DNA of 64,000 nt from positions 237,008 to 301,007 of IMG/VR virus record IMGVR_UViG_3300036770_007539; one strand, written 5' to 3'. The notes beneath the pieces were generated by a model. The model did no database searches and was not told the DNA's origin. It saw only the letters and a program-made list of their open reading frames with translations. This document shows, piece by piece, positions 35,164 through 51,600 of this stretch; within the stretch, counting starts at the first letter, position 1; every line of letters begins with the position of its first letter. A program made the translations under genes and the position numbers.

Positions 35164-35408
35164 GCGCTACATTGGCTATTTGGAGATCTAGTGTATTCGA
35201 AGCCGTACTATAAGAAATATTCTTCTTTCAATGACTTCTTTTTCTTTTCTCTTTTCCAAGAAAGAGGGGGGAGGGGGAGTCAATGAAAAAAAATCTTCTT
35301 TACAAGAGGCTTTACCTTTCTTTTTAGAGATCATGTTTCTTCGAAGCCAGTGCAGGTCTGACATTTCTAATCAATCGTTCGTTTTATTACTCTCTTGATA
35401 GCTAGGGC
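35164..35408. repeat. AT-rich spacer element 1
   Basis: GCGCTACATTGGCT ... AGCCAGTGCAG ... GCTAGGGC. Confidence 0.75.
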
Positions 35409-35433
35409 ATATTGTCGTGTTTGCGTGCGTAAC

Positions 35434-35535
35434 TTGACAAGTGATGGATCGTTGCTAGTATGTAGGGTGTGAGATGAACGCAAACGAGACAACGCAAGCG
35501 CGCTTGATTGACAAGCGGTGCAGCGGTGCTAGTAT
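35434..35535 (+). promoter_or_regulatory. Tandem sigma70-like promoters, unit 2
   Basis: TTGACA 35434-N16-TAGTAT; TTGACA 35508-N16-TAGTAT. Confidence 0.8.
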
Positions 35536-35819
35536 GCGGTCATCGAAGATTCGACGCAGCATAGGGGCGTCGAGACGAGCCGCCGTTAGCGGTGCTCTAA
35601 CAGAGCAGTCACGGGCTAGCCCGTGAATCGAGCCGGGCGATTCCCGGTGGTGAGCAAGGGATCTTGCGGCTTTGCCGGTTGAAGCCGCAAGATCCCTTGC
35701 CCTTGATAATCTGTGGAAGCTGTGCATAATGGTGTGCATGGCTTTGGGGGTCAATCCCCGCTTTGCCGGAGAGTGTCCGGTAACGTCCAAGGGGACGCAT
35801 GTCCCCGGAAAGGACTTTC

Positions 35820-36185
35820 TTGAACCTCCAAAAGAGGATCGAGGAAGTGGACCAGGCGCTCGCGCGTCTGGTCCAGAGCGAGATCGTCGTCGCGCAGGTA
35901 GTGCTCGACGATCTGATCTACCTCCACCGCCCCGCCAGCCGTCAGCACGTCTTGCGACAGCGGGCGGATCGCCTACTCCAGGATCGGGACTGGCGAGTCC
36001 AGCCGATCCTGGAGCGGCGCGAGCGACTGGAGCGCCTTCGCGGGCTGCTCGTCGCTCGCGCCGCACGCGCCGCAGGTCGCGACACCTGCGGCTACTGTGG
36101 GTGGGACAACGGTCCCATCGACCCCGCCACAGGTCGCGGTCTCAGCCGTCAAGGCTGGGATTGCGGCTATTGCGGGGGGAACTAA
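35820..36185 (+). CDS. Coiled-coil protein with a C-terminal Zn finger
   Basis: CGYCGWD..CGYC; TTG start after AAAGGA. Confidence 0.6.
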   Translation: MNLQKRIEEVDQALARLVQSEIVVAQVVLDDLIYLHRPASRQHVLRQRADRLLQDRDWRVQPILERRERLERLRGLLVARAARAAGRDTCGYCGWDNGPIDPATGRGLSRQGWDCGYCGGN

Positions 36186-36243
36186 CCCTTCTCTCCGCAT
36201 CGTTTCCTCCGCGCTCCCCTTCGGGGTCGAGCGCGGGGGAGGC

Positions 36244-36312
36244 TGCATCTTCTCGCTTGGAGGCGAGCGCCCCTTGCGGGGCGGACGGGTTCGATTCCCG
36301 TAGGATGTACCA
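36244..36312 (+). ncRNA. Anticodon-less tRNA-like element 3 (four-arm)
   Basis: TGCATCTT/AGGATGTA; GG-containing D-like loop; 4-nt-loop middle arm; ACGGG-TTCGATT-CCCGT; ends ACCA. Confidence 0.75.
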
Positions 36313-36380
36313 TGAGAGCTTGTCTCTCCCGCGTCGGACGGATTCCGATTGTCTGCGATCGAGAAAGGAGGACTGTCCAC

Positions 36381-36722
36381 ATGGCACAGTACCTCGGAAA
36401 CGCCTTCTCGCTCGGTATGCTCGATTGTCTCACGGCGGAAACGCCTGTGAGCGTCGAGTGTGCCGCCTTCACGCTCGACGAGGCACGCGCCTACGTCGAG
36501 CACAACCGCCCGACCTCGACGGTCGGGCACCTCGACACGGCGGAACTCTTCTCCGCCATGTTGGGGTCTTCCGTGGAGATGCGCCGCGTCTCCACGTCTC
36601 TGATCGGCGGGGATGAGATCCTCGTCGGTCAATACAACGGTCCGCGTCTTCCGGAGGGGGCGAAGAGCCTCCCCGAGGGCGCCAAGGTCCGCTGGATTCT
36701 GGCGCGCATCGTCGCGCGCTGA
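36381..36722 (+). CDS. acrIII-1: DUF1874 / AcrIII-1-like viral ring nuclease (anti-CRISPR type III)
   Basis: YLGNAFS, TLDEAR, STVGHLDTAELFSAMLG, EMRR, GDEIL, RLPEG match the STIV B116 / SIRV1 gp29 / YddF pattern. Confidence 0.8.
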   Translation: MAQYLGNAFSLGMLDCLTAETPVSVECAAFTLDEARAYVEHNRPTSTVGHLDTAELFSAMLGSSVEMRRVSTSLIGGDEILVGQYNGPRLPEGAKSLPEGAKVRWILARIVAR

Positions 36723-36881
36723 GGGTCCACACTCGCCCCTGGTTCCCCGCAAGGGTTGAGCCGGGGGCGTCCCTTCGGGGGAATATCTTTGGAAACTGCC
36801 TGCAAGTTCTGGCTTGTGGGCAGCTTCGAGGGATTGTCCCTTGACCGTAGCTAGGCGGACACCTAGCATCAGGAGGGTCAC

Positions 36882-37106
36882 ATGACTCTTCAAGAAGCAA
36901 TCCGAGAGGTCCGAGACCTTTCGGGAATCCCGGAGGAGCAGCTGCTCCGGGATTGGAACGAGAAGAAGTGCCAGTCTATGGACTGGCACTTCGACACCGA
37001 GACGGTCGAAGACCGTCTCGGAGAGTTGGTGACGTACTTCTACGTGGAAATCATCCCCGAAGGGGATGGTTTCCGCGTCAGGTCTCGAAAAGAGACCTGG
37101 CGATGA
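36882..37106 (+). CDS. Hypothetical protein
   Basis: AGGAGG RBS; 74 aa. Confidence 0.6.
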   Translation: MTLQEAIREVRDLSGIPEEQLLRDWNEKKCQSMDWHFDTETVEDRLGELVTYFYVEIIPEGDGFRVRSRKETWR

Positions 37107-37413
37107 GCCTCGCCCCCGCGTTCCCCTTCGGGGTCGAGCGCGGGGGCACTCGCGGGTTGAGCCGAAAGGTTCCCCGCTCTGACTTCAGGTGGCTCCGACG
37201 CTGATAACGGCGCGGGTTTGATACCCGCTGGAGGACACAGAACATCCTCCTAGCGAAAAGCCGCAGCGGGGAGTGCTTCCGATTCGGGTTACGGTGCAGG
37301 TTTGAGTCCTGCTCTCCCGCGTCACGGGGGTCGGTTGAGACGCCGCCGAACGGAAGCAACGCCTGATTGCAACAACAATAAAGGGGGCGCATATCCCCCG
37401 GAAAGGATATGGT

Positions 37414-38127
37414 TTGAGGACCATCTGCATCGGCGACATCCACGGATGTATCGCCGAGTTTCAAAAGCTCGTGGAGGTTCTCGCGCCCACGAGCGAGGAT
37501 CGGATCGTCCTGTTGGGCGATCTGATCGACAAGGGTCCAAAAAGCGCAGAAGTGGTTCGCTTCGCCCGCGAGATCGGAGCGACCACCATTCAGGGCAACC
37601 ACGAGGAGAAGGCTCTTCGATGGTTTGCCCACGAGAAGACTCGGATCGCCACGGGGAAGGCGAATCCGATGAGCCCTCCCGAGCACAAGGTTCGGGAGTG
37701 GAACACGATCCCCGCCGATGATCGGGAGTGGCTGGCAGCTGCTCCCGTTTACACGGATCTCGGCTCCGGGTTCCTCGCCGTTCACGGCGGGATGCTGCCC
37801 GGGGTCAAGCCACAAGATCACAAGAAGGGAATCCCCCTCCGCCTGAGGTTCGTCAACGACAAGGGCAAGTTTCTGCCCCTCGACGACGACCACGGCGATC
37901 CTGAGGGAGGTATCCCCTGGTACCAGGTCTACGATGGGGAGCACTCCCTGGTGGTGGGTCACACGGTTCACAGCCTGGAGTATCCCCGAATGGATCGTAT
38001 CGGGGATCGGGTGATCTGGCACCTGGACACGGGTTGCGTTCATGGTGGTCGCCTGACGGCGCTCATCCTGGAGACGCAAGAAGTCGTCCAGGTACAAGCG
38101 TCCCAAGTCTACAAGGCGCGGGACTGA
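37414..38127 (+). CDS. Calcineurin-like metallophosphoesterase (ApaH/PrpE/Pnkp-phosphatase-like)
   Basis: GDIHG, GDLIDKG, GNHE, HGG, GHT, LDTGCVHGGRLTA. Confidence 0.9.
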   Translation: MRTICIGDIHGCIAEFQKLVEVLAPTSEDRIVLLGDLIDKGPKSAEVVRFAREIGATTIQGNHEEKALRWFAHEKTRIATGKANPMSPPEHKVREWNTIPADDREWLAAAPVYTDLGSGFLAVHGGMLPGVKPQDHKKGIPLRLRFVNDKGKFLPLDDDHGDPEGGIPWYQVYDGEHSLVVGHTVHSLEYPRMDRIGDRVIWHLDTGCVHGGRLTALILETQEVVQVQASQVYKARD

Positions 38128-38447
38128 GGCGATTGGATTGTTCCTGCGTTCCCCGCAAGGGTTGAGCGCAGGAACAAGTTTCAAGAAGAAAGGAAGAGGA
38201 AGTGGAAATCTGTATGGTTTCGGGTTTTCCGACTCCTTGCGGGTGTTTTGCCTGCCAGGAGTCGGTGGAGCAGGCGCGCGGTGGCAACTGCCACTGCAGC
38301 GCCTGCTGCAAGGTTCGCTTCGGAAACGAAGCGAACGAAGCGAACGAAGGTTGCCGATGGGAGGCGGTTCGACCGCCTCGTCCTCGGCAGTAGGAATCGC
38401 CCCATCGCGTTCCCCCTTGCGGGGTCGAGCGCGATGGGGATTTTTCT

Positions 38448-38683
38448 GCGCTACATTGGCTATATCTGAGATCTTGACATATTCGTTGCTGATGCAGAAT
38501 CTTTTTTTCTTCAATGATTTTTCTTTTTTCTTTTCTACGGGAGGGAGAAACAAGAGAATCAATGAGCTAAGATATTCTTCAAAAGAAACGACTTGTCATT
38601 TATCTTTTACGAGATCAAACACATTCGGAGCCGATGCAGCTCTGATTCGTTTATCAAACGTTTGTTTAGTTCTCAGCTAGGGC
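38448..38683. repeat. AT-rich spacer element 2
   Basis: GCGCTACATTGGCT ... AGCCGATGCAGC ... GCTAGGGC. Confidence 0.75.
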
Positions 38684-38717
38684 TAGGGTGTTCGTTTCTG
38701 CGTGAATCTGTGCAGCC

Positions 38718-38873
38718 TTGACAACGGGCGGATCGATGCTAGATTGTATGGTGTGAGAGAGAGCAACGAATCGAAACAAGCGAGCGAATGAGCGAACGCA
38801 TAAGCCGCGACGGTAGCGGTTAGCGGGTAGCGGATAGCGCGTAGCTTGACACGGTTGGATTCGCTGCTAGGCT
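38718..38873 (+). promoter_or_regulatory. Tandem sigma70-like promoters, unit 3
   Basis: TTGACA 38718-N16-TAGATT; TTGACA 38846-N16-TAGGCT. Confidence 0.75.
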
Positions 38874-38894
38874 TTCTCATAGAAGGGAGGTTAC

Positions 38895-39200
38895 ATGCAA
38901 CAGATTTGTGGAAGATGCTCCGGAAGGGAGAGTCATTCCTGTTGCCCTGATTGCAGGGGAAAGGGCTGGCTTTCCCGCGCGGACGTTCGCGTTCTTCGCT
39001 TGAAGCAGGCGGCATTCTGTTTGCTTCACGAGAAGGCGCGCGAGCATTGGCTCACGCTGAGTGAGCCGCGTCCGCGCCAGGAGTCCTTCGTGCTGGACTA
39101 CGTGTTCAAGCACGAGCAATGGTACTTCGAGACGATCGTCTCGAAGTTTACCCCGGAGCAGAAGCGCACGCTTCTGCGTCGGTTCCCCTGCAATCCCTGA
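38895..39200 (+). CDS. Hypothetical protein with a DnaJ-type Zn motif
   Basis: CGRCSGR..CPDCRGKG. Confidence 0.6.
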   Translation: MQQICGRCSGRESHSCCPDCRGKGWLSRADVRVLRLKQAAFCLLHEKAREHWLTLSEPRPRQESFVLDYVFKHEQWYFETIVSKFTPEQKRTLLRRFPCNP

Positions 39201-39307
39201 ACCGGGTAGAGCGAGCCCTCGCAAGGGGGCTCGTTCCCTACAACCGGATCTGGATCGTGATTGATCTAGGTTCGATTATAGGGATTACCCCTATTGAAAG
39301 GAGGAGC

Positions 39308-39445
39308 ATGAAGTTTCTGGAAAAGCTCTCGAATCGATTGCCCTACGTCGTTCAAGAGTCCCCGCTCGACCCGATCACTTGGATCTTTGCGGTCCCTTTG
39401 CTGGTCCTTTACGGGATTGGCTACATTGTCGGGGGATTGACGTGA
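39308..39445 (+). CDS. Small membrane peptide
   Basis: GAGGAG RBS; hydrophobic C-terminal half. Confidence 0.5.
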   Translation: MKFLEKLSNRLPYVVQESPLDPITWIFAVPLLVLYGIGYIVGGLT

Positions 39446-39615
39446 AAGACGACTTCCTCGACGATATCATCGCAAAGATCGACTCTCTTCGCATCGAGGA
39501 GTGCGAGAGCGGGGCGATCATTCGCAAGCCGGAGGTGAGCGACTTCAAGCGTCCCTCCCTTCTACCCAAGATCATCAACATGCGATCCTTGCTGGTCGAT
39601 TCTAGCAAGTCGTGA
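39442..39615 (+). CDS. Hypothetical protein
   Basis: GTG start overlapping the upstream stop. Confidence 0.45.
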   Translation: MKDDFLDDIIAKIDSLRIEECESGAIIRKPEVSDFKRPSLLPKIINMRSLLVDSSKS

Positions 39616-39621
39616 ACGGCA

Positions 39622-39687
39622 GCATCCCCTCGTGTGGTTGCGAGCACCTGAAAAGGTGGACAGGTTCGATTCCTGTGGGATGCACTA
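39622..39687 (+). ncRNA. tRNA-like element 4 (compact cloverleaf)
   Basis: GCATCCC/GGGATGC; CTCG-TGTGGTTG-CGAG; CACC-TGAAAA-GGTG; ACAGG-TTCGATT-CCTGT; ends ACTA. Confidence 0.75.
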
Positions 39688-39747
39688 CCGCGTCGGACGG
39701 ATTCCGATATCTCTTGAATGGGGGCAAAGCTCCCGGAAGGATTCTTC

Positions 39748-40131
39748 ATGTCGAATGATGACCGTATCGAGCGATTTGCTCGCTCGATCGCCTTGAAGCT
39801 GTACAACGATTCATGGTCCGAGAACGACCTCAAGTACTTTCTCGTACCCCGCCCGCCGCCTGCGTGGGTGGTTTGCAATGTTGCAGCTTCCAATGCGTTC
39901 ATTAGAGGCGGCGAACCTCTGGATCGAGAGGGCATGATCGCTCTTGCTGGTGATTGTGCAAGGAAAATCTTTGCAATCTTCCAGGAGGAGATGTTCATAG
40001 ATTCGGAGGTGACTGTTCCATCTCCCCTCTACCAGCAGGAAGATATCGAGCAGGCGATCTTGACCATCCCTGCGAGGGTGGACGAGGCTCTCGAAGAAGC
40101 GAAGAAACCCCCGATTCGTGCCATCGCATGA
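39748..40131 (+). CDS. Hypothetical protein
   Basis: RBS after a structured leader. Confidence 0.6.
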   Translation: MSNDDRIERFARSIALKLYNDSWSENDLKYFLVPRPPPAWVVCNVAASNAFIRGGEPLDREGMIALAGDCARKIFAIFQEEMFIDSEVTVPSPLYQQEDIEQAILTIPARVDEALEEAKKPPIRAIA

Positions 40132-40293
40132 GTTTGGTGTGGTATCGTCCCTGGCTCCCCTCTTCGGAGGGTCAAGCCGGAGGCACCCCTTCGGGTGAAT
40201 ATCTTTGGAGCCTGCTTGCAAGTTTCTTGTAGGCAGGTTCGAGGGATTATCTCTCGACCGATACCGGACGGATATCCGGCAAAGGGAGACATC

Positions 40294-40629
40294 ATGTACG
40301 ATGATGATGTGCTCGAAGCTCTGCTGGTGCTCTTGACTGAGCATCAGCGGTTGGAGAGGCTTCTGAACGCTCAGAAGTCTCGTGGGATCGCCTTCGAATG
40401 CCTTCTCCGCCAGCAGAAAGCTGTCGAGAAGGCTCTCTTCTCTCGCACGATGCGGGGGAAGATTCGCCGCCAGCTCCGCGACGCCGCCGACAAGGCGGCA
40501 GTCGAGAAGATGCACGCAGCCGCCGCCAAGAAGCTGCGAGAGGCAGAAGCTGAGAAGCGTTGGGAGGCGGAGGAGCGAATGAAGCAAACGTGGCGAGAGC
40601 TTGGCGCGGTCGCCGCCAAATTTCCGTAG
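40294..40629 (+). CDS. Coiled-coil hypothetical protein
   Basis: GGGAG RBS; Glu/Lys/Arg/Ala-rich. Confidence 0.6.
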   Translation: MYDDDVLEALLVLLTEHQRLERLLNAQKSRGIAFECLLRQQKAVEKALFSRTMRGKIRRQLRDAADKAAVEKMHAAAAKKLREAEAEKRWEAEERMKQTWRELGAVAAKFP

Positions 40630-40795
40630 TGTTCTAGATCGAATCCGTCCCATCGCGTTCCCCTTCGGGGTGAGCGCGATGGGGCGACCCTTCATGGGAA
40701 TATCTTTGGAAGCTACCTGCAAGTTTCTTGCAGGTAGCTTCGAGGGATTGTCCCTTGATTGAAACCAGGCAAATACCTGGTCTTTTGGAGGCATC

Positions 40796-41086
40796 ATGGG
40801 CATCATCATCGAAGTTGTGAACCACCCCTCTGCTAACGAAAAAACAAAATGGTGGATGATTGAGACGTTGGAGAACGTCTTCAACATCTCCTTGACTGCT
40901 GAGGAGGATCGCCAGTTGGATATGGTGATGGAGAATTTGCCCGTGGGAGGTACGATTCGTATCTCTCACGACAGTCTTCCTGTGGAGTACTTACTTCACC
41001 GAGCGCAGGAACGAGACGTTCCTTACTCTTGCGGTGAGGAATGCTGCGGAATCGAATCCTACGAATGGGTTCGGTTGTTGACATGA
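40796..41086 (+). CDS. Hypothetical protein with CGEECCG motif
   Basis: GGAGG RBS; paralog of 34899..35111. Confidence 0.65.
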   Translation: MGIIIEVVNHPSANEKTKWWMIETLENVFNISLTAEEDRQLDMVMENLPVGGTIRISHDSLPVEYLLHRAQERDVPYSCGEECCGIESYEWVRLLT

Positions 41087-41206
41087 CTTGGGAGGATCTT
41101 GGGGGAGTGGCAACGTTGCTGCTCCTCTTTCTGATGGTTCTCTTTGCGTGAAGTCCTGTCCGGGGCGAGGTTGAGCCGAAAGGTTCCCTCGTTCCGGGTC
41201 TTTTCT

Positions 41207-41444
41207 GCGCTACACTGGCTATTTCTTTGGAGATCATGCATGTTCAGATTCTTTTTTGTAATCAAAATCTTTCAGTGTTTTTCCTTTTTCTTTTTTCACA
41301 ACATAAGAGAAATAAACAACAATGATAAATGTGGTTTCAATAAACGATTTCTAACGATCATTTCTTTTCAAAGAGACATGAATGTTCAGAGCCTATGCAG
41401 CCCTGATTGTGTTATCAAACGTTCGTTTAGTTCTTAGCTAGGGC
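41207..41444. repeat. AT-rich spacer element 3
   Basis: GCGCTACACTGGCT ... AGCCTATGCAGC ... GCTAGGGC. Confidence 0.75.
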
Positions 41445-41479
41445 ATAAAGCGCGTTAGATCGTGAATATAGGCGTGCGC

Positions 41480-41595
41480 TTGACAAGTAGCTGATCGTTG
41501 CTAGTATGTAGGGTGTGAGAGGGAGAGTGTGAACGGAAACGCTAGCAAGCGCGAACGGGCTAGCGGTTGACAACGGCTCGAGCGTGGTGTATACT
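41480..41595 (+). promoter_or_regulatory. Tandem sigma70-like promoters, unit 4
   Basis: TTGACA 41480-N16-TAGTAT; TTGACA 41567-N17-TATACT. Confidence 0.8.
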
Positions 41596-41615
41596 GCATC
41601 ACGGTAGGAGGAAGC

Positions 41616-41789
41616 ATGTACGTCATTCAGGTAGGCAGGGGACCCAAGGGTTCGTATCGTACCCGCTACACGTTCAGTGCGGAGGATTGGACCAAAGCAA
41701 GCTTCTACTACGCTTGCATCAATGTGGGGTACGGGTACAAGAAGCGCCTTGTGCGCGATGGCAAGGTGATCGCACGCTGCTACAGCTGA
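41616..41789 (+). CDS. 57 aa basic protein (MYVIQVGRGPKGSY...)
   Basis: AGGAGG RBS; hand-translated, below the ORF-track cutoff. Confidence 0.6.
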   Translation: MYVIQVGRGPKGSYRTRYTFSAEDWTKASFYYACINVGYGYKKRLVRDGKVIARCYS

Positions 41790-41803
41790 AAGGACAAGTG
41801 AGC

Positions 41804-41959: not shown

Positions 41960-42068
41960 GCCGGAATGGGCGAGCCCTTGCGGGCTCGTTCCCTGCAATC
42001 GGACCTGGATCGTCACTGATCTAGGTTCGACTCCAGGGAATCTTTCCTGGTCTTTCGGAGGTGTGTTT

Positions 42069-44914: not shown

Positions 44915-45189
44915 CCGCTCGATCTGCTCGTCGACAGCACTCCAAGTATCTGCGTGAGATGGGTGTGCCCTTCATCATGCGCCAGAGTCTCGCCAAGACT
45001 CGCTACCAAGGATTGATGGATGACCATTACTTGAGTCGAAAAACTCAGCTGGTCACTACCTACTACGACAGCAACGGTTGCGATTGCTGTCCTCCTTCCA
45101 AGATTCAATATTGGGAGGTGGTGGTGCAGAAAAAGACCTATCGAATCCAAACGGAAGATGGTCGAATCCAATCTTGCCTCAAGTTCTGA
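44911..45189 (+). CDS. Hypothetical protein
   Basis: ATGA coupling; 92 aa. Confidence 0.55.
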   Translation: MTARSARRQHSKYLREMGVPFIMRQSLAKTRYQGLMDDHYLSRKTQLVTTYYDSNGCDCCPPSKIQYWEVVVQKKTYRIQTEDGRIQSCLKF

Positions 45190-45237
45190 GGCTTGGGGAC
45201 GCATCTGGGGCTGAACGGTCCTGGGTGCGTCCCCGAA

Positions 45238-45489
45238 GCGCTACATTGGCTCAACAGTGATCTTTGCATGTTCAGAACGTTCTTTATGCAAAAGCATCTT
45301 TTTTCTTTCAATGATTGCTATTTCTTCTTTCAAGTAACGACATGAATAATCAATGAATGACAAGTATCTTTCAAACAAAGAACTTTCAAATCATATATCT
45401 TTTCAACCAGATCTTTGTTCGTTCAGAGCCTATGCAGTCCTGACTTTTTCACTGGCTTTTTGACGGTTTTCGTCCCTTCTGGCTAGGGC
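45238..45489. repeat. AT-rich spacer element 4
   Basis: GCGCTACATTGGCT ... AGCCTATGCAGT ... GCTAGGGC. Confidence 0.75.
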
Positions 45490-45522
45490 TAGATCGCTTG
45501 TTTTCGCGCATATTCGCGCGCC

Positions 45523-45649
45523 TTGACAATCGGCGGATCGTTGCTAGTATGTAGGGTGTGAGAGAGAGCACGAACGAACGAATGAACGAACGAACGCTAG
45601 CACGACGCTAGCGCGATGCGTTTGACGCGGCTCGATTCGATGCTACGTT
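45523..45649 (+). promoter_or_regulatory. Tandem sigma70-like promoters, unit 5
   Basis: TTGACA 45523-N16-TAGTAT; TTGACG 45622-N16-TACGTT. Confidence 0.75.
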
Positions 45650-45683
45650 GCAAGTGTCGCCGATACATGGCGAGGGAGGCAAT

Positions 45684-46157
45684 ATGTGGATTGACCAGCG
45701 CGAGATCGACCGAGAGAACGAGAACTACAGCCTGGAGTCGCACCAGGAGGTAGTTCAGGAACAGGCTCGGAAAGAGATGATCGCGAGCTTGACCAAGCTC
45801 TGGGAGGAGACGGATCGCAAGATCGACGGCAAACGCGAAGCTCTCACGAGTGAGAGCTTCGACGAATACATCCGTCGGATCGCAGATGATAACGCCTATG
45901 AGAAGCGCGAAGCTCTCTCGGAGAAGCTCGGACGCAAACTCACCCGTGATGAGGAGCACGAAATCTTTCGCGAGGAGAAGGATAGCATCATTCAAAAGAT
46001 CAATGGCGAGATCGAGATCCTGGTCGCCAAGCTCGACATGATCGAAACGCAACTTCGCAGCCTGGGTGCTCGCAAGGCACGTCCTTACGAGCACTGGAAC
46101 GAGGAGGAGCACATCGTTCAGTATCTGGAAACCAGGAACGACAACCGCGACTACTGA
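45684..46157 (+). CDS. Acidic coiled-coil protein (paralog of 53676..54170)
   Basis: Shared LGAR..RPYEH.NE.E..YLE.R..NDR C-terminus. Confidence 0.7.
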   Translation: MWIDQREIDRENENYSLESHQEVVQEQARKEMIASLTKLWEETDRKIDGKREALTSESFDEYIRRIADDNAYEKREALSEKLGRKLTRDEEHEIFREEKDSIIQKINGEIEILVAKLDMIETQLRSLGARKARPYEHWNEEEHIVQYLETRNDNRDY

Positions 46158-46212
46158 ACCCAAGATCCCGGCTCGCCCTTCGGGGCGGGTCGGGTTCGAC
46201 AACGGAGGAATC

Positions 46213-46485
46213 ATGGAAAAGATTGCACGAGTGGTTGAGCACCCCGAAGCCCAAAAGTACGACCTGCGATGCAACTATCATCGGGGCGTCCTGGTGGACG
46301 TGCCTTCGGACAAGGTTCTGCGAGGGTACGATGGCGGTCTGTACGCCACCGTGGACGGTGAGTGGTACAGCGTTCATCCGTCCAATACTTCCAACCTGAT
46401 CGGAGCCCTGGGTATTCGATACCAGCTCCGAGAGGAAGGCTCGGAGGGAGACATGATCTCCTTCCTGCAAGCGCAAACCGACTGA
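46213..46485 (+). CDS. Hypothetical protein
   Basis: GGAGG RBS. Confidence 0.6.
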   Translation: MEKIARVVEHPEAQKYDLRCNYHRGVLVDVPSDKVLRGYDGGLYATVDGEWYSVHPSNTSNLIGALGIRYQLREEGSEGDMISFLQAQTD

Positions 46486-46587
46486 TCTGGACGGGCGAGC
46501 CCGCAAGGGCTCGCTCCCTGCAATCGGGATTCGATACGGATCGAATCTCGATTCTAGGGAATGTCCCCTAGCAACGGAGGTATTGTG

Positions 46588-46908
46588 ATGGGCAAACTGG
46601 CAGGATCGATGTGGAGGATCAATAAGTCGAGCATGGTGGTTCCCCTCCAGCCTGTCGAGGACGCGGATGCGTATTGGTTTGGCTATGCTGAACTTGACGA
46701 GGGAGACACGGTAATCATCCTCGGTGAACCGGTCCCCACGGTCGATTCAGACCCCGCTAAGAAGCACCACAGCTACGTCCCTGTCGAGTTTCGTAACGGT
46801 TACGCGCCTTTTTTCGGGTGGCGCAACGGTTATGTGTCCAACTACAAGGGTTACATGAACGCGACCTACTTCATCTGCGAATCTATCTGGATGGAGAGAG
46901 TAGGGTAA
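46588..46908 (+). CDS. Hypothetical protein (SH3-like?)
   Basis: GGAGG RBS after a switch-like leader. Confidence 0.55.
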   Translation: MGKLAGSMWRINKSSMVVPLQPVEDADAYWFGYAELDEGDTVIILGEPVPTVDSDPAKKHHSYVPVEFRNGYAPFFGWRNGYVSNYKGYMNATYFICESIWMERVG

Positions 46909-47018
46909 TATCCAGAACTAGGACGGGCGAGCCCGCAAGGGCTCGCTCCCTGCAATCGGGATTCGACACTTGTCGAGTTTCGATTCTAGGGAATGTCCCC
47001 TAGCACCAAGGAGGCTTT

Positions 47019-47270
47019 ATGCCGCTTTTCGTTTCTTTCCAGGATTCCAGCACCGATCCCACCTACGCGCTCGCCGATGATGTGGTCCTCGTCGAGAGCA
47101 GCGACGACGATGACAACAATCCTTGCGTCGGGCGCTCGGTTCGTCGCACCGCACCCGTCGCTCCGATGACGGCGGAAGAGATTCGCGCTTTCGCTATGGT
47201 CATGGGTTGGTCATGGGAGACGCACCGTGATGGGACACTGGTCCTATCTACGGGCGTCCAAGATATCTGA
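47019..47270 (+). CDS. Hypothetical protein (paralog of 42633..42890)
   Basis: Same leader and N-terminus. Confidence 0.7.
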   Translation: MPLFVSFQDSSTDPTYALADDVVLVESSDDDDNNPCVGRSVRRTAPVAPMTAEEIRAFAMVMGWSWETHRDGTLVLSTGVQDI

Positions 47271-47389
47271 TAGGAAGGGCGAGCCCTCGCAAGGGGGCTC
47301 GCTCCCTGCAATCGAACCTTGATGCCGAAAACATCGGAGCTATGTCAAGGTTCGATTCTAGGGATGTCCCTAGTGTTACGGAGGTTTCC

Positions 47390-47848
47390 ATGAACGACGA
47401 TTATCTGCACGTCAACCAGTTCAGCTTCAACTTCCGCCAGAATCAGTACGAGATCCTGGAACTCAAGGGTGTCAACATCTACGAAGATAGGACCATCTGG
47501 TGCTCTCATGCCGATGATGGGGAAGGCTGGGATGTATTCATCTGCTACCAGCCCGAAGATGACGACAATACTGGGACCATCAATCCTAGCCATCTCAACA
47601 AGTCTTGGGCTAAGAAGTTCAAGACTGAGATGCAAGAAGATCAGGACGGTGAACCCGCTCCTTGGAACATGGGCAGGAATCTGAGCATGAGCGAGGTTCA
47701 AAGCATGGTTCGCTACTTCAGGCGAAAGATACTGGTGGGTGTCCTTCGGCAGAAACGCGACCGTGAACTCGGTTACTGTGACGAGGATCTCAACCGAGAA
47801 AAGTGGTCCAACTACTGGATCGGCGAAGGCTATACCGAATACTACTGA
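47390..47848 (+). CDS. Hypothetical protein (paralog of 52511..52957)
   Basis: Shared GEGWDVFI.Y.PEDDD, SWAKKFKTEMQEDQDG, MVRYFRR. Confidence 0.75.
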   Translation: MNDDYLHVNQFSFNFRQNQYEILELKGVNIYEDRTIWCSHADDGEGWDVFICYQPEDDDNTGTINPSHLNKSWAKKFKTEMQEDQDGEPAPWNMGRNLSMSEVQSMVRYFRRKILVGVLRQKRDRELGYCDEDLNREKWSNYWIGEGYTEYY

Positions 47849-47902
47849 AACAACGCACCTGGGCATGTGTCTAAACTGCCCTTTTCTTGAAAGGAGAATG
47901 TC

Positions 47903-48193
47903 ATGAACAATGATTTTCGTGCTTCCATTCTTGCCGCTCGTGAAGATTGGCGCATATCCAATCTGATCAAAGCAATCCAGTCTCATCTGGACGGTGAGGA
48001 AATCTATCTTCCCCGATTCGAGGAAGATCAGCAGGGCGGTCATTTCGTGCTCTCGGAATGGATCAAGATCCCTGCTTCCCGAATCATGAGAATATTGGGA
48101 GTCGACCATCCCCGCGATTTGGGATGGGGGCGTGATGGTGAACCACCGACTCCGAATCCTTCGGCAATTCCTTTCAAAGGAGAATGTCAATGA
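47903..48193 (+). CDS. Hypothetical protein
   Basis: AAAGGAG RBS. Confidence 0.6.
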   Translation: MNNDFRASILAAREDWRISNLIKAIQSHLDGEEIYLPRFEEDQQGGHFVLSEWIKIPASRIMRILGVDHPRDLGWGRDGEPPTPNPSAIPFKGECQ

Positions 48194-48390
48194 ACGTGAA
48201 TGAGTTTCTGAAAGAGGCATTGGAGCCGCAACCTCAAATGCGCAAGGGGCAGCATTTCATCAATCGTCTTACGGTGGTGAAGCCCTGGCTATCTTACAAG
48301 CTCCAGCAGACAGGCTTGGATCCATACTACGTTGACAGCAAGCTGCCTGCTGCAATCCAATACACCGTAGAAAACTGGGATCTCTTCTAA
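48190..48390 (+). CDS. Hypothetical protein
   Basis: AAAGGAG RBS; ATGA coupling. Confidence 0.6.
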   Translation: MNVNEFLKEALEPQPQMRKGQHFINRLTVVKPWLSYKLQQTGLDPYYVDSKLPAAIQYTVENWDLF

Positions 48391-48400
48391 AAGAGATACC

Positions 48401-48461
48401 GCATCGACTGGTCCGCACCCGCAAGGGTGCGGAGGAGGTTCGATTCCTCCACGATGCACTA
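48401..48461 (+). ncRNA. Anticodon-less tRNA-like element 5
   Basis: GCATCG/CGATGC; CTGGT linker; GCAA hairpin; GGAGG-TTCGATT-CCTCC; ends ACTA. Confidence 0.75.
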
Positions 48462-48513
48462 AGCACACAAGCTGTTGCATTGGGCAATTGCAAGTGCTTT
48501 CGTGAGGTGAGTC

Positions 48514-48891
48514 ATGGATTTCGTTCTTTCCCGCAAGACTGGCAGCGACATGTACGGATTCTGCCCCCTTTTCCAGTCTTTGGTCATCGGGAATCTGCGC
48601 GTCTCCATCCAAGCGAGTCGAACCCACTTCTCCTCTCCCCAAGCAGACTTCTCCAACTCGGACTTGTATTCTGAGTTCGAAGTGGCGCTGCTGACGCTCC
48701 GAGATGGCAAGTGGTTTCATCCGGAGAAGGACAAGCGGTTCGCTCAAACCGAATGGGCAAAGTACTACTGGAAAGACTACGATGACGTAGCTGCTTACGT
48801 ACCGCGTCATCTGGTGGCGCAAATGATAACTGACCTGCGCTTGGATGCGGCTTCAAGGCGAAAGCGTATGAAGCCGATTGCCAAGAAGTGA
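48514..48891 (+). CDS. Hypothetical protein
   Basis: GAGGTG RBS; 125 aa. Confidence 0.65.
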   Translation: MDFVLSRKTGSDMYGFCPLFQSLVIGNLRVSIQASRTHFSSPQADFSNSDLYSEFEVALLTLRDGKWFHPEKDKRFAQTEWAKYYWKDYDDVAAYVPRHLVAQMITDLRLDAASRRKRMKPIAKK

Positions 48892-48956
48892 CCGCACAGC
48901 CTCTCGGCTCGCCCTTCGGGGCGGGTCGGGAGGCTTTTTTTTTTGCGAAGAAGTAG

Positions 48957-49210
48957 AGCGGCTTCGCCGCTCCAATGTTTCTATCAATTTCTTTTTTTCA
49001 AAGCCATATTCATTTCAATTTCAAAAACAAATCATTTCTTTGAAATCTATTCAGATTCAATTACAAGATACTTTGATTTCAAACAGTATCTTTGATCATC
49101 TTATTCCATACAATGTTTTTCCATTCTTTTCTAACAAAGCCAATGTAGCGCTGACATTCCGTCAATGGTTTTTGTCCCGTTTTTTGCCTTTTACCCCTTC
49201 GGGCTAGGGC
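48957..49210. repeat. AT-rich spacer element 5 (variant)
   Basis: GAGCGGC-TTC-GCCGCTC CAATG ... AGCCAATGTAGCGC ... GCTAGGGC. Confidence 0.7.
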
Positions 49211-49234
49211 AGAATACGTCTAAACGCACGCGAT

Positions 49235-49360
49235 TTGACAAGCGCAAGATCGTTGCTAGTATGTAGGGTGTGAGAACGAATGCGAACACGCAAACGCTCT
49301 CGTCGAGAGTAGCACGGCGCGATTGACAATGTTTGACAATCGCGGATTCGTGGCTACAAT
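49235..49360 (+). promoter_or_regulatory. Tandem sigma70-like promoters, unit 6
   Basis: TTGACA 49235-N16-TAGTAT; TTGACA 49333-N16-TACAAT. Confidence 0.8.
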
Positions 49361-49397
49361 ACAGATGCGGCAATCAAGCCGCGTTTCGGAGGTTGTC

Positions 49398-49853
49398 ATG
49401 TCCAACACGTTCAAGATCGATCCCTCGTTCCTCGTCAAGTTCGTTTCCTCCGTCGTGGATGCTGCGAACAAGCGGATTCCGGTCAAGGATCTGGCTGGAA
49501 TCCTGCAAAGGCTCGACAGCGATCAGGGGCGCGTGGCTGCGTCGTTCGACGCCGACGATCTGGAAAAGGTGATCGTCGGCACGGTCAACAACCTGCACGG
49601 ATTCGACATTCGTGCGGGTCGTTCGGGTGGCGTCGGGCGCGTGGAGATGTTCAAGGGTGGAGCATCCGACGAGCCGAGCGGTGTCGCCGCGCAGATCGCG
49701 GCACGTCTGCGTGAATACTGCAAGGCGGCTGGAAAGCCCTTGGAGATCCCCGAGTCCCGGCGGATCGTCAACGCTTACCTGAACGATCTGATCTTGCAGC
49801 AGGCACCGGGCAATCTGACGGCGGAGGATCTGCTGTCTCGATACGGCGGCTGA
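49398..49853 (+). CDS. Promoter-proximal protein (paralog of 51807..52232)
   Basis: Shared VDAAN.R.PV, RAGRSGGVGR, FKGG, NAYL. Confidence 0.75.
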   Translation: MSNTFKIDPSFLVKFVSSVVDAANKRIPVKDLAGILQRLDSDQGRVAASFDADDLEKVIVGTVNNLHGFDIRAGRSGGVGRVEMFKGGASDEPSGVAAQIAARLREYCKAAGKPLEIPESRRIVNAYLNDLILQQAPGNLTAEDLLSRYGG

Positions 49854-49982
49854 TCGGGTGAGGGAGCGAGCCTTTAGGGGCTCGCTCCCTGTAACCGAGG
49901 GTTGACACCGAAAACATCGGATCTATGTCAATCTTCGGTTACAGGGAGCAATTCCGCTATCCTGTATTCTGGGAGTGTTTGC

Positions 49983-50243
49983 ATGAGAATGCATGAGATT
50001 CTGGCACCGATCCGCGCGCACGCACGTCTCGCTCCGCTGGATCGTCTGTCCGTGGATGGTGCGAAGATCCTCGCCGACATGGTGTACGCCATGCGTGGCG
50101 CGGATCGTCGCTGTCAAGAGCACGCGGCGGATTGTCTCGCGGCTCTGCGTCCGCGTCTCTACGATCTCTGGGACGTGGCTCGCGCTGTCGAGCCGTGTCC
50201 AGAGTGGCTGAAGCCACTGGCGGAGTACGGTCCTCGACACTGA
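49983..50243 (+). CDS. Hypothetical protein
   Basis: GGGAG RBS after a switch-like leader. Confidence 0.55.
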   Translation: MRMHEILAPIRAHARLAPLDRLSVDGAKILADMVYAMRGADRRCQEHAADCLAALRPRLYDLWDVARAVEPCPEWLKPLAEYGPRH

Positions 50244-50316
50244 AACAAGGGCGGGGAACGAGCCCGAATGGGCTCGTTCCCCGCCTGTCTCTCATCTCAA
50301 ACCTGGAGGTTTTCAC

Positions 50317-50655
50317 ATGCGTATGCACCCCACTACTGCCATTCTCGTGACCCTCAACACCTTCGCCCGCGAATACGTCGAGTATTACGGAGGGGTGAAT
50401 CACCTGCTGGACGTTCCTGTTCTCGCGGAACAGGGGCGTGCGCTGGAGGCGGTCATCACCGCCATCTACAAGGGAATCGTCGATGGCAGTATCCCTGCCA
50501 ACGAGCGCACACGTCAAAGCGCGCAACAGTGGAGCGAGGGGTTGATTACCCTTCCAGAATCTCTGGCATTCCTGATCTCTGAGATGAAGCCGCCGAAAGG
50601 CATTCCCCTTCACGGTGAACGCTTGGCGGTCATTCTTGGAGGCTTCTTGCCTTAG
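50317..50655 (+). CDS. Hypothetical protein
   Basis: GGAGG RBS. Confidence 0.6.
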   Translation: MRMHPTTAILVTLNTFAREYVEYYGGVNHLLDVPVLAEQGRALEAVITAIYKGIVDGSIPANERTRQSAQQWSEGLITLPESLAFLISEMKPPKGIPLHGERLAVILGGFLP

Positions 50656-50802
50656 TCATCGACACGAGAGCGAGCCCTCGCAAGGGGCTCGCTCCCTGCA
50701 ATCGAACCTTGACGAGCACTTGTTGCTGTGATAACGTCAAGGTTCGATTCTAGGGGATTGACAATTCTGTGTGAGCTAACCTTTCCCTCAAAGGAGGTAT
50801 CA

Positions 50803-51237
50803 ATGAACATCGAAATCGACCCGATCAGCATGGCTCTCATCAAGAACCCTCGTGCCGTTGCCAAGGCGATGGTGGTCCTGTTTTCTTTCCAGACAGCTAA
50901 GGAGAGAAGCACGGGCATCACCAGGGAATCCAACGGCAAGGGCTTCTCTTCTTACGACGATAAGAAGTGCAGCCGCTACGCACGATGGATCCTCCGCATA
51001 AGTAACAACGCCTCTGACGAGGAGGTGCGGACCAAAATCCGCAACTACCTGACGCACGGTCATCAACCCAACAACCGTGACCTGACCGGTACTCATCTGG
51101 ATGACGCTCGTATGCGCTCTCTCAAGTACGTCGGTCAGCTGAAGCGGTATGCTGACAGCAAGAAGGCTGCCAGCGCGGCGGTCACTGCACCGGTCACGGC
51201 TCCTACGGAGGCGAATGATGCAGCTGACGATTCTTGA
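50803..51237 (+). CDS. Hypothetical protein
   Basis: AAGGAGG RBS. Confidence 0.65.
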   Translation: MNIEIDPISMALIKNPRAVAKAMVVLFSFQTAKERSTGITRESNGKGFSSYDDKKCSRYARWILRISNNASDEEVRTKIRNYLTHGHQPNNRDLTGTHLDDARMRSLKYVGQLKRYADSKKAASAAVTAPVTAPTEANDAADDS

Positions 51238-51293
51238 CTATCTGATCCGTAGCAATGCGGATTGTGTAGTCCAGCAAGCTTGGAAGTGAAAGT

Positions 51294-51333
51294 GAGCGAG
51301 TCCCTGGCAACGGGGGCTCGCTCCTTTTTTTTG
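51294..51333 (+). terminator. Rho-independent terminator
   Basis: GAGCGAG..CTCGCTC stem followed by a T tract. Confidence 0.7.
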
Positions 51334-51344
51334 TGGATTTTTCA

Positions 51345-51600
51345 GCGCTAGGGCGGCTTTGCCGCCCCAATGAGATCAATGTTTGGAGCCCGATCTATTC
51401 CAATGCCCTATTTCTATTCCAACAATGCTTCTATATTCTTCTATCTATCTCTCTTTGCTTCTTTCAATTCATTCTTACAATGAACTTAAACAATCTCTTC
51501 AATGATCAATGTTTGGAGCCAATGTAGGTTTTCCATTGTTTTGGGTGATTTTTAATCTCAGAATTGGTGATTTCCCGAAAAAATGCTTTTTAGCTAGGGC
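51345..51600. repeat. AT-rich spacer element 6 (variant)
   Basis: GGGCGGC-TTT-GCCGCCC CAATG; several CAATG boxes; AGCCAATGTAG; GCTAGGGC. Confidence 0.7.

What the first reader, a model, noticed from the sequence alone, without database searches (positions are those of the whole stretch)
35164..51600. Length-conserved AT-rich spacer bounded by a GCTACATTGGCT inverted repeat before each promoter unit
Seen: six ~240-255 bp AT-rich blocks interrupt a GC-rich region. In copies 1-4 the left box GCGCTACAYTGGCT faces a degenerate reverse copy (AGCCNRTGCAG) 193-201 bp away. Between them are ordered GATC, TCAATGA, TCAATGA, GATC boxes and A/T tracts. Each block ends with GCTAGGGC 24-35 bp before the -35 box. 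Copies 5-6 carry AGCCAATGTAG and many CAATG boxes. A possibly inverted relative lies at ~60.75-61.0 kb. The filler sequence has diverged while box order and spacing are kept. Inference: a protein-wrapping, looping or insulator element, a recombination site, or a signal for stepwise DNA injection. I do not recognise it as a described element.
Basis: partly seen in the sequence, partly recalled or inferred. Interest (0 to 1): 0.75.

Follow-up and report, generated by a model that had tools for sequence, protein, structure and literature searches.

The report
Repeated terminator–spacer–promoter cassettes in phage
Six diverged copies of one control cassette (a terminator, a roughly 250-bp T-rich spacer with fixed sequence boxes, and a strong bacterial-type promoter) separate the small-gene operons of a GC-rich island in an uncultivated giant phage. 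They are most likely protein-binding control regions, an enlarged variant of the repeated promoter/terminator cassettes already known from T4-like phages.

Summary
Six T-rich, 33-36% GC spacers of 238-269 bp lie at the stated places. Each sits between a very stable terminator hairpin and a near-identical sigma-70-type promoter with an extended -10. The boxes occur nowhere else in the 301-kb virus record. These are the left box GCGCTACAYTGGCT (copies 1-4), the right box AGCCNRTGYAG (all six) and GCTAGGGC (all six). CAATG is 16-fold enriched in the spacers. Copies 1 and 2 differ by about 16 indels, yet both measure exactly 274 bp from left box to -35.

Three corrections. The GC-rich region is not non-coding: it holds seven rightward operons of small, mostly orphan genes. 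The proposed relative at 60.75-61.0 kb is not supported. The A/T tracts are not helically phased in copies 1-3.

Best reading: each spacer is the upstream control and insulating part of a repeated inter-operon cassette, and its boxes bind an unidentified protein. No binding protein, recombinase or orthologous spacer could be found. Related phages have GC-rich islands with their own, different repeated cassettes; one carries 18 sigma-54-type promoters. The closest known analogue is the PeSL cassette of T4-like phages. I class it as a new variant of a known kind, of moderate interest.

The parts
35117..35461 (+). Cassette 1. Terminator hairpin 35117-35154 followed by a U-run. Left box GCGCTACATTGGCT 35164-35177. 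167-nt T-rich inner segment. Right box 35345-35362. GCTAGGGC 35401-35408. P1 promoter 35434-35461. A second promoter, P2, lies at 35508-35535.
   Evidence: hairpin -35.1 kcal/mol, z -5.0
38400..38745 (+). Cassette 2. Terminator hairpin 38400-38439 followed by a U-run. Left box 38448-38461. 167-nt inner segment. Right box 38629-38646. A sequence matching the IHF consensus (TATCAAACGTTTG; consensus recalled, not scanned or tested) just after the right box. GCTAGGGC 38676-38683. P1 promoter 38718-38745.
   Evidence: -41.8 kcal/mol
41159..41507 (+). Cassette 3. Terminator hairpin 41159-41198 followed by a U-run. Left box, variant GCGCTACACTGGCT, 41207-41220. 169-nt inner segment. Right box 41390-41407. 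GCTAGGGC 41437-41444. P1 promoter 41480-41507. P2 at 41567-41595.
   Evidence: -28.7 kcal/mol
45191..45550 (+). Cassette 4. Hairpin 45191-45239 with no U-run, so read-through is possible. Left box 45238-45251. 175-nt inner segment. Right box 45427-45444. GCTAGGGC 45482-45489. P1 promoter 45523-45550.
   Evidence: -39.6 kcal/mol
48898..49262 (+). Cassette 5. Terminator 48898-48935 followed by a run of nine T's. Second small hairpin 48956-48972 followed by CAATG, standing where the left box would be. Right box 49138-49155, which is the exact reverse complement of the 14-nt left box. GCTAGGGC 49203-49210. P1 promoter 49235-49262. P2 at 49333-49360.
   Evidence: -35.7 kcal/mol
51294..51652 (+). 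Cassette 6. Terminator 51294-51322 followed by a T-run. An extra GCTAGGGC at 51347, fused to hairpin 51351-51367, followed by CAATG. Eight CAATG copies in all. A 17-nt direct repeat, GATCAATGTTTGGAGCC. Right box 51517-51527. GCTAGGGC 51593-51600. P1 promoter 51625-51652.
   Evidence: -30.1 kcal/mol
33100..52500 (+). Context: a GC-rich island (61% falling to 47% GC) inside a 33% GC phage genome. It holds seven rightward operons of small genes. Recognisable genes are a Metallophos phosphoesterase (37414-38127), an AAA_33 kinase (42063-42530) and a STIV_B116-like protein (36312-36722). The rest are orphans. The first operon (promoters at 33116 and 33231) has no left, right or GCTAGGGC box upstream.

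Best explanation
Each block is the middle part of a composite inter-operon control cassette, present six times in the probably early-expressed small-gene island of an uncultivated jumbo phage.

Order of parts: a strong intrinsic terminator ends the upstream operon. A 240-270-bp T-rich non-coding spacer follows. A 24-35-nt GC-rich linker then leads into a sigma-70-type promoter with an extended -10 (TTGACAAG, 5 nt, GATCGTTGCTAGTAT).

Proposed mechanism (inferred): the left box, right box, GCTAGGGC box and the CAATG-then-T-run repeats are binding sites for one or more sequence-specific DNA-binding proteins, host- or phage-encoded. Binding sets the activity of all six promoters together, either as activation or as timed shut-off, and isolates each promoter from transcription and supercoiling coming from the operon upstream. 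The two inverted end boxes lie 179-187 bp apart across easily bent AT-rich DNA. That arrangement suits bridging or looping by a bivalent protein, or wrapping by a cooperative array.

A side effect: the repeated cassettes supply homology for recombination that shuffles the orphan-gene operons.

What is shown: the anatomy, its uniqueness, the pattern of conservation, the length constraint, and the terminator and promoter consensus matches.

What is inferred: early expression, protein binding, looping, the regulatory effect, and the recombination role.
For: 1. The boxes are far beyond chance and confined to these six sites in 301 kb, all in one orientation and one order.
2. The filler is diverged (59-66% identity) while the boxes are invariant.
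3. The two central positions of the right box vary freely (AG, GA, TA, TA, AA, AA). The single change in the left box of copy 3 is not compensated. This fits protein half-sites, not base pairing. The covariation term is only -0.31 kcal/mol.
4. Length is constrained. Copies 1 and 2 have about 16 indels with a net change of 0. Right box to -35 is 89, 89, 90 bp, even though GCTAGGGC moved 9-10 bp within that interval.
5. GCTAGGGC to -35 falls in two classes one helical turn apart (32-33 and 41-43 bp). Vector strength is 0.9, and 0.5% of random sets do as well. Right box to GCTAGGGC is 47, 47, 55, 56, 65, 76 bp, with vector strength 0.87.
6. CAATG is 16-fold enriched and strand-biased, and is usually followed by a T-run.
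7. Every spacer starts right after a hairpin of -28 to -42 kcal/mol. Five of the six hairpins are followed by a U-run. Every spacer ends at a near-identical promoter.
8. The first operon of the island has no operon upstream of it and lacks the element. This fits an inter-operon role.
9. Related phages have the same design with different boxes: terminator, then a multi-box spacer, then a repeated promoter.
10. Indel sizes are mostly not multiples of three, so the spacer is not coding.
Against: - No binding protein was identified. There is no HU/IHF, HTH_3 or sigma-54 activator in the 301 kb. The one complex-prediction job was not run by the tool.
- No orthologous spacers at useful divergence could be recovered, so selection on the boxes is inferred from paralogues only. 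Those are related by descent, which inflates the phasing statistics.
- The left box is absent from copies 5 and 6, and the right box is degenerate in copies 1-4. A strict two-site loop therefore cannot be universal.
- Left-to-right and right-to-promoter distances are not helically phased across all copies.
- A/T tracts are not phased in copies 1-3, so there is no evidence for intrinsic curvature.
- Similarity between copies falls with distance along the genome. Serial duplication or local gene conversion would produce that pattern without any function.
Confidence: 0.5

Rival explanations
1. A passive repeated cassette. Only the terminator and the promoter are functional. The spacer and its boxes are leftover sequence, copied along when the cassette spread by duplication and kept patchily similar by gene conversion. 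Its only consequence is homologous recombination that shuffles operons, as with PeSLs.
For: - Similarity between copies falls with genomic distance: z about 15 for copies 1-2 and 2-3, and about 2 for copies 2-6.
- Island gene content turns over almost completely between relatives. Only 3 of 49 ORFs are shared, and two of those are in swapped order.
- Each related lineage has its own homogenised cassette.
- PeSLs are known to behave this way (PMC2839356).
Against: - Gene conversion homogenises tracts. It does not preserve 8-14-nt boxes embedded in 35-40% diverged filler.
- A net length change of zero after about 16 indels needs selection on spacing.
- So does the one-turn relocation of GCTAGGGC with the total distance kept.
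- The promoter core is about 90% identical while the 25-35 nt just upstream of it are not conserved.
Confidence: 0.2
2. Remnants of a small mobile or invertible DNA element bounded by terminal inverted repeats. This could be a MITE-like element, or a segment flipped by a site-specific recombinase.
For: - A 12-17-nt inverted repeat bounds an AT-rich segment of about 190 bp. In copy 5 the right box is the exact complement of the 14-nt left box.
- Conserved ends with a diverged interior is what is seen in MITE families.
Against: - All copies share one orientation and one context, and there are none elsewhere in 301 kb.
- No consistent target-site duplications flank the copies.
- Single-strand DNA folding is barely better than shuffles, with z of -0.9 to -2.2 for copies 1-4.
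- No resolvase or integrase was found.
- T-richness of the + strand is kept in all six copies, so none is inverted.
- No strand-switch joints were seen, though only contigs were available.
- The promoter lies outside the repeat.
Confidence: 0.07
3. A DNA-transaction signal: a pause or stop signal for stepwise genome entry, multiple replication origins or unwinding elements, or packaging sites.
For: - AT-rich, easily melted segments sit in GC-rich surroundings, with repeated boxes and GATC sites. GATC occurs 12 times against 4.6 expected.
- All units point one way, as would suit transcription-driven DNA entry.
Against: - Six copies at intervals of 2.4-4 kb, each tied to a terminator and a promoter, fit transcription units better than entry, replication or packaging.
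- No DnaA-box-like or iteron arrays lie inside them. The 11-bp array at 32.56-33.01 kb is a better origin candidate.
- The genome ends are unknown, and the record is estimated 71% complete.
Confidence: 0.05
4. An RNA-level element. The spacer would be transcribed, either by read-through or from its own promoter, and act as a structured RNA or a small RNA.
For: - The hairpin of cassette 4 lacks a U-run, so some read-through is likely.
- RNAalifold draws a left/right closing stem and a pyrimidine/purine hairpin.
Against: - The covariation term is -0.31 kcal/mol, and most 'pairs' are U-G or U-A between a U-run and a purine run.
- The left-box change in copy 3 breaks the stem without compensation.
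- No consistent internal promoter was found on either strand.
- No Rfam match was found.
Confidence: 0.05

Closest known systems
PeSL cassettes (promoter-early stem-loops) of T4-like phages (Arbiol et al. 2010, PMC2839356; Comeau et al. 2014, PMC4122927)
   Same: Both are repeated composite motifs: a stem-loop terminator with G/C runs, an AT-rich region upstream of -35, and a strong sigma-70-like promoter. Both are concentrated in hyperplastic regions and flank small orphan genes, and both are lineage-specific in sequence.
   Different: - PeSLs are compact, and the stem-loop often overlaps the promoter. Here the terminator and promoter lie about 280-300 bp apart.
- The intervening spacer here has its own ordered, dyad-arranged boxes and a length constraint.
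- Here the cassettes flank multi-gene operons rather than single ORFs.
- The phage is unrelated to T4. It uses a DnaE-type polymerase whose best match to known phages is 30% identity.
- Recombination between copies has not been shown here.
Upstream activating regions of bacterial rRNA P1 promoters (UP element plus phased Fis sites, with tandem P1-P2); from general knowledge
   Same: Both involve very strong sigma-70 promoters, and three of the six here have a second promoter 74-98 bp downstream. Both have AT-rich upstream DNA carrying several factor sites. One box here lies at helically equivalent distances from the promoter.
   Different: - The AT-rich block here starts about 60 bp upstream of the -35 element, behind a GC-rich linker, so it is not a classical UP element.
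- The box sequences are unrelated to Fis sites.
- The element extends to about -300.
Host-takeover module of Bacillus phage SPO1 and its TF1-bound early promoters; from general knowledge
   Same: Both are clusters of many strong host-type early promoters and terminators that drive small orphan genes in one region of a large phage genome. In SPO1, a phage DNA-bending protein binds near the early promoters and represses them.
   Different: - No HU/TF1 homologue was found here.
- No long boxed spacers are described for SPO1.
Repression loops between paired operators (araO2-araI at about 210 bp; galOE-galOI at 113 bp with HU); from general knowledge
   Same: Both have two related sites in defined orientation, 100-200 bp apart, across bendable DNA.
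   Different: - The putative loop here lies wholly upstream of the promoter.
- Copies 5 and 6 have only one good site.
- The protein is unknown.
Correia/MITE-type small repeats with terminal inverted repeats and internal IHF sites
   Same: Similar size (about 190 bp), terminal inverted repeats, an AT-rich interior and an intergenic position next to promoters and terminators.
   Different: - There is no dispersal, no mixed orientation and no target duplication here.
- Hairpin potential is weak.

Membership tests
PeSL-type repeated promoter/terminator cassette | Sigma-70-like consensus promoter in every copy | tested here: met
   TTGACA, 16 nt, TAGTAT (TAGATT in copy 2), preceded by TG, at 35434, 38718, 41480, 45523, 49235 and 51625. 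This is a consensus match only; activity was not measured.
PeSL-type repeated promoter/terminator cassette | Adjacent stable stem-loop acting as a terminator | tested here: met
   All six have hairpins of -28.7 to -41.8 kcal/mol, with z of -3.5 to -7.6. Five are followed by U-runs.
PeSL-type repeated promoter/terminator cassette | AT-rich region upstream of -35 | tested here: met
   33-36% GC across 238-269 bp. It is far longer than in PeSLs and is separated from -35 by a 24-35-nt GC-rich linker.
PeSL-type repeated promoter/terminator cassette | Copies flank orphan genes in a hyperplastic region | tested here: met
   - Most island ORFs have no Pfam or PHROG match.
- Only 3 of 49 ORFs are shared with related islands.
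PeSL-type repeated promoter/terminator cassette | Recombination between copies (indels, mini-circles) | tested here: inconclusive
   Only assembled contigs were available. The joints seen have short sides (21-29 nt) in repeated sequence and are probably mapping artefacts.
PeSL-type repeated promoter/terminator cassette | Sequence homology to T4-like PeSLs, or a T4-like host genome | tested here: not met
   - No DNA match to any phage record.
- The replicative polymerase is DnaE-type, with a best match of 30% identity to known phages.
MITE-like element | Terminal inverted repeats | tested here: met
   12-17 nt, imperfect in copies 1-4. Copies 5 and 6 have one end only.
MITE-like element | Target-site duplication, with dispersed copies in both orientations | tested here: not met
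   There are no consistent flanking duplications. All copies share one orientation and one context, and there are none elsewhere in 301 kb.
Invertible promoter segment (inverton) | Site-specific recombinase, and both orientations present in a population | tested here: not met
   - No resolvase or integrase domain was found in the 301 kb. The record is only 71% complete.
- Orientation in reads could not be tested, as only contigs were available.
- Strand composition is the same in all six copies.
Sigma-54 enhancer (upstream activator sites, IHF bend, -24/-12 promoter) | A -24/-12 promoter and an enhancer-binding ATPase | tested here: not met
   - There is no TGGCAC-N5-TTGC at the six promoters.
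- No Sigma54_activat domain is present.
- A related phage does carry 18 such promoters.
T5-type injection stop signal | A single non-coding repeat region at a fixed fraction from the entering genome end | not testable with these tools
   The genome ends are unknown: the record is linear and estimated 71% complete. Six dispersed copies do not resemble it.

The most novel reading that the evidence does not exclude
The spacer is a dedicated, dyad-arranged nucleoprotein element about 190 bp long, placed between a terminator and the next promoter. An unknown factor bridges the terminator-proximal left box and the promoter-proximal right box. This would couple the end of one operon to initiation at the next, by polymerase hand-off or supercoil cancellation, and would allow one protein to switch the whole array at once. 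That would be a cis-regulatory architecture not described for phages.
Probability: 0.15. Interest if true: 0.65.

Novelty: new variant of a known kind. Interest (0 to 1): 0.45.

Why it matters
If the boxes are real operator sites, this element would show how an uncultivated jumbo phage coordinates a whole battery of probable host-takeover operons through one repeated control module. It would also provide a ready-made set of strong promoter, insulator and terminator parts.

The wider context may matter more than the spacer itself:
- A GC-rich small-gene island is maintained inside AT-rich phage genomes across diverged relatives.
- Each lineage has its own repeated cassette, and one lineage appears to use sigma-54-type promoters.

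Together these make the phage group a natural experiment in how phage regulatory cassettes and orphan genes turn over.

Tried and rejected
Searches for the boxes and promoter elsewhere:
- The exact promoter and box patterns in IMG/VR gave no hits or only chance hits inside coding sequence.
- blastn against 50,697 phage records found no match.
- A GCTAGGGC-to-promoter pattern in JGI metagenome contigs gave 7 chance hits.

Searches for relatives:
- A related-locus search with the phosphoesterase in IMG/VR found nothing.
- Relatives were reached through protein homologues. They have GC-rich islands but not these boxes.
- The closest relative, at 71% identity, has no DNA on file.
- Clusters of the flanking proteins contain only this phage.

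Reads:
- Public runs were laid on the region, but only assembled contigs exist. Relatives at about 93-98% identity are fragmentary, and nothing is informative on inversion or deletion.

Hypotheses rejected:
- Giant non-coding RNA for the GC-rich units. ORFs tile the + strand with a coding GC pattern, there are Pfam hits, and alternative genetic codes are not needed.
- RNA or cruciform structure for the spacer.
- Intrinsic curvature from phased A-tracts.
- An inverted relative at 60.75-61.0 kb.
- Dam-type methyltransferase as a reader of the GATC sites: none found.

Not done:
- A complex prediction of the B116-like protein with the left-box DNA was not run by the tool, so it is no evidence either way.
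- The similarity between the right-box core CCNATGC and the relatives' ATGCTTTTGCC boxes is too short to count as homology.

Full report
WHERE THE WINDOW LIES. The window is the last 64 kb of a 301-kb linear IMG/VR virus record, estimated 71% complete. Public runs that hold it are subsurface and freshwater metagenomes. The record encodes a DnaE-type DNA polymerase III alpha subunit, and one of its large proteins contains an intein. Its best match to known phages is only about 30% identity. It is therefore an uncultivated jumbo phage. The genome is about 33% GC, except at record positions 270-289 kb (window 33.1-52.5 kb), where GC runs from 61% down to 52%.

THE OBSERVATION.
- The left box matches 6 times in the window (one mismatch allowed), against 0.34 expected. 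None of 100 shuffles reached that.
- In the whole record, the left box, the right box AGCCNRTGYAG and GCTAGGGC occur essentially only at the six spacers. All are on the + strand and in the same order.
- Distances: left to right box 179, 179, 181, 187 bp. Right box to -35: 89, 89, 90, 96, 97, 108 bp. The gap from GCTAGGGC to -35 is 24-35 nt.
- The blocks are 238-269 bp long, 33-36% GC and T-rich on the + strand.
- CAATG, usually as TCAATGA or followed by a T-run, is the most enriched 5-mer: 19 observed against 1.2 expected, with + strand bias.
- Copies 5 and 6 lack the left box. They carry a small GC hairpin plus CAATG in its place.
- The right box of copy 5 is the exact complement of the 14-nt left box. 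The ancestral element therefore probably had perfect inverted ends.

CORRECTIONS TO THE OBSERVATION.
- The proposed relative at 60.75-61.0 kb is not significantly similar on either strand.
- A/T tracts are not helically phased in copies 1-3.

WHAT SURROUNDS THE SPACERS. The GC-rich stretches are not non-coding.
- Plus-strand ORFs with a coding GC1/GC2/GC3 pattern tile each unit.
- Three have Pfam matches: a Metallophos phosphoesterase, an AAA_33 kinase and a STIV_B116-like protein.
- Several are independently called genes in public collections.
- Most are orphans.
- Each unit starts at a near-identical promoter: TTGACAAG, 5 nt, GATCGTTGCTAGTAT, then GTAGGGTGTGAGA. This is a sigma-70 consensus with an extended -10.
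- Units 1, 3 and 5 have a second promoter 74-98 bp downstream.
- Each unit ends in a hairpin of -28 to -42 kcal/mol, and five of the six are followed by a U-run.
- The left box begins 6-12 nt after that hairpin.
- The blocks are therefore the inter-operon regions of seven tandem operons. The first operon has no operon upstream and lacks the element.

EVIDENCE FOR CONSTRAINT.
- The inner segments of copies 1-4 are homologous but only 59-66% identical. The boxes are invariant.
- Copies 1 and 2 differ by 16 gaps, 22 nt on each side, yet both span exactly 274 bp from left box through -35.
- Within the right-box-to-promoter interval, GCTAGGGC lies 9-10 bp further from -35 in copies 2 and 3 than in copy 1, while the total stays at 89-90 bp.
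- Across all six copies, GCTAGGGC to -35 falls in two classes one helical turn apart. Vector strength is 0.9, and 0.5% of random sets do as well.
- Right box to GCTAGGGC is 47, 47, 55, 56, 65, 76 bp, with vector strength 0.87.
- These statistics treat the copies as independent, which they are not, so I count them as suggestive only.
- Left-to-right and right-to-promoter distances are not phased across all copies.

PROTEIN SITE OR NUCLEIC-ACID STRUCTURE?
- The two central positions of the right box vary freely.
- The one left-box substitution, in copy 3, is not compensated.
- The alignment fold has a covariation term of only -0.31 kcal/mol.
- Single-strand DNA folding of copies 1-4 is barely better than shuffles, with z of -0.9 to -2.2.
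- Indel sizes rule out a conserved ORF.
- No Rfam family matches.
- This favours protein recognition of duplex DNA.
- No candidate binder was found. The 301 kb contains no HU/IHF, HTH_3, sigma-54 activator, resolvase, integrase or Dam-type methylase.
- The B116-like ORF is the only island gene linked to a DNA-binding fold. That link comes from my recollection of the STIV B116 literature and was not tested. The complex prediction was not run by the tool.

RELATIVES.
- Neither the boxes nor the promoter occur in IMG/VR, in 50,697 phage records or in JGI metagenome contigs beyond chance.
- Homologues of the phosphoesterase at 54-71% identity led to contigs from other samples.
- The two long enough to judge, L019 and L022, again show a GC-rich island (55-66% GC, falling rightwards), which in L019 directly abuts AT-rich phage DNA. 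This rules out a chimeric assembly.
- Gene content is almost entirely different: only 3 of 49 ORFs are shared.
- Each lineage has its own repeated inter-operon cassette.
- One (L022) has TTGACAAC...GCTAGATAGGG promoters behind 300-500-bp spacers filled with ATGCTTTTGCC boxes.
- Another (L019) has 18 copies of TGGCATGRTAGTTGCT, all on one strand, a close match to the sigma-54 -24/-12 consensus. Most are followed by a GGATCAWTGGCAAACG box.
- The design is therefore conserved, while the sequences are lineage-specific.
- Orthologous spacers at informative divergence were not obtainable.

INTERPRETATION. The best-supported reading is a composite inter-operon control cassette whose spacer is a protein-binding upstream region. 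I give this 0.5.
- Its nearest described counterpart is the PeSL cassette of T4-like phages. That is a stem-loop terminator, an AT-rich region and a sigma-70-like promoter, repeated around orphan genes in hyperplastic regions, and it mediates recombination (PMC2839356, PMC4122927).
- The present element shares that logic but is not homologous to it.
- It differs in having about 280-300 bp between terminator and promoter, an ordered dyad layout of boxes, and a length constraint.
- A purely passive cassette gets 0.2. The decay of similarity with genomic distance and the heavy gene turnover favour it. The box-versus-filler contrast and the compensated indels argue against it.
- Mobile or invertible element, DNA-entry or origin signal, and RNA element are each weakly supported (0.05-0.07).
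- Early expression of the island is itself an inference, drawn from the promoter type and the gene content.

VERDICT. The element is a new variant of a known kind. Interest is moderate (0.45). It rises if a box-binding factor and a looping or insulating function are shown.

Noticed in passing
window 33100-52500; L019:5000-17500; L022:1-14000: A GC-rich island (61% falling to 47% GC, left to right) of small, mostly orphan genes sits inside a 33% GC jumbo-phage genome. The same GC-rich island, with the same left-to-right fall in GC, recurs in relatives that share almost no island genes; in L019 it directly abuts AT-rich phage DNA. The high GC is therefore maintained and is not a recent import. 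The cause is unknown.
   Followed up: partly
window 32560-33010; L019:5189-5375: About 40 tandem copies of an 11-bp unit (GGATAGAAnnn), purine-rich and almost free of C, lie between the divergent gene blocks, just upstream of the first island promoter and next to a 25% GC stretch. GC skew flips from -0.7 to +0.8 here. The relative has an 11-bp TGCTATGAGAT array at the equivalent place. This could be an origin or a protein-nucleation array.
   Followed up: partly
L019 (18 sites between 5381 and 17066); L025:277 and 1200: A related phage island carries 18 same-strand copies of TGGCATGRTAGTTGCT, a close match to the sigma-54 -24/-12 promoter consensus. Most are followed by a GGATCAWTGGCAAACG box. 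This suggests a phage gene island driven by sigma-54. The window's own promoters are sigma-70 type but share the GCTAG motif at the -12/-10 position.
   Followed up: partly
window 33667-33699, 34579-34611, 39655-39687, 48429-48461: tRNA-like T-arm plus acceptor-end minihelices (GGGGGTTCGATTCCCCC..GCACTA or GCACCA) lie between island genes. They give sub-threshold Rfam hits to tRNA-Sec and mascRNA. They may be RNA processing points.
   Followed up: no
window 41956-42050, 42527-42617, 46481-46571, 46913-47003, 47269-47375, 49852-49950, 50665-50767 and others: Families of 50-100-nt GC-rich two-level hairpin modules (CGAGCC..GGCTCG followed by TCCCTGCAATCGA..TTCGATTCTAGGGA) recur between cistrons of the island operons. 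An identical 40-nt hairpin occurs at 34775-34814 and 35117-35156.
   Followed up: no
window 30000-32310 (minus-strand ORFs 30008-30475, 30629-31243, 31683-32306): These genes have extreme strand composition: GC skew is about -0.7, so the coding strand is nearly free of C. They encode ordinary-looking G/E/V/R-rich proteins.
   Followed up: partly
window 35466-35500, 38750-38790, 45555-45600, 33150-33220; L022:8150-8170, 12570-12620: The transcribed leaders begin with a conserved GTGTGAGAG, which is also present in a relative. They continue with U-poor (ACGA/CGAAA)n-like runs before the first gene.
   Followed up: no
window 59131-59336, 55026-55099, 57081-57165: A group I intron (Rfam, 59.9 bits), tRNA-Lys(UUU) and tRNA-Leu(CAA) lie in the AT-rich part to the right of the island.
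   Followed up: no
G000:C1:30695-30880 (L035) and 211370-211468 (L036): The phage encodes at least one sigma-70-family factor (Sigma70_r2, 44.9 bits). Similar TTGACA-type promoters also occur at the left end of the record (for example 8788, 22782, 30508). The probable early region may therefore continue across the record's ends.
   Followed up: no
window 25695-29921, 24632-25561: Two large paralogous proteins with collagen triple-helix repeats plus a Laminin_G_3 domain, and a third Laminin_G_3 protein, lie just left of the island. They are probably fibre or adhesin proteins.
   Followed up: no
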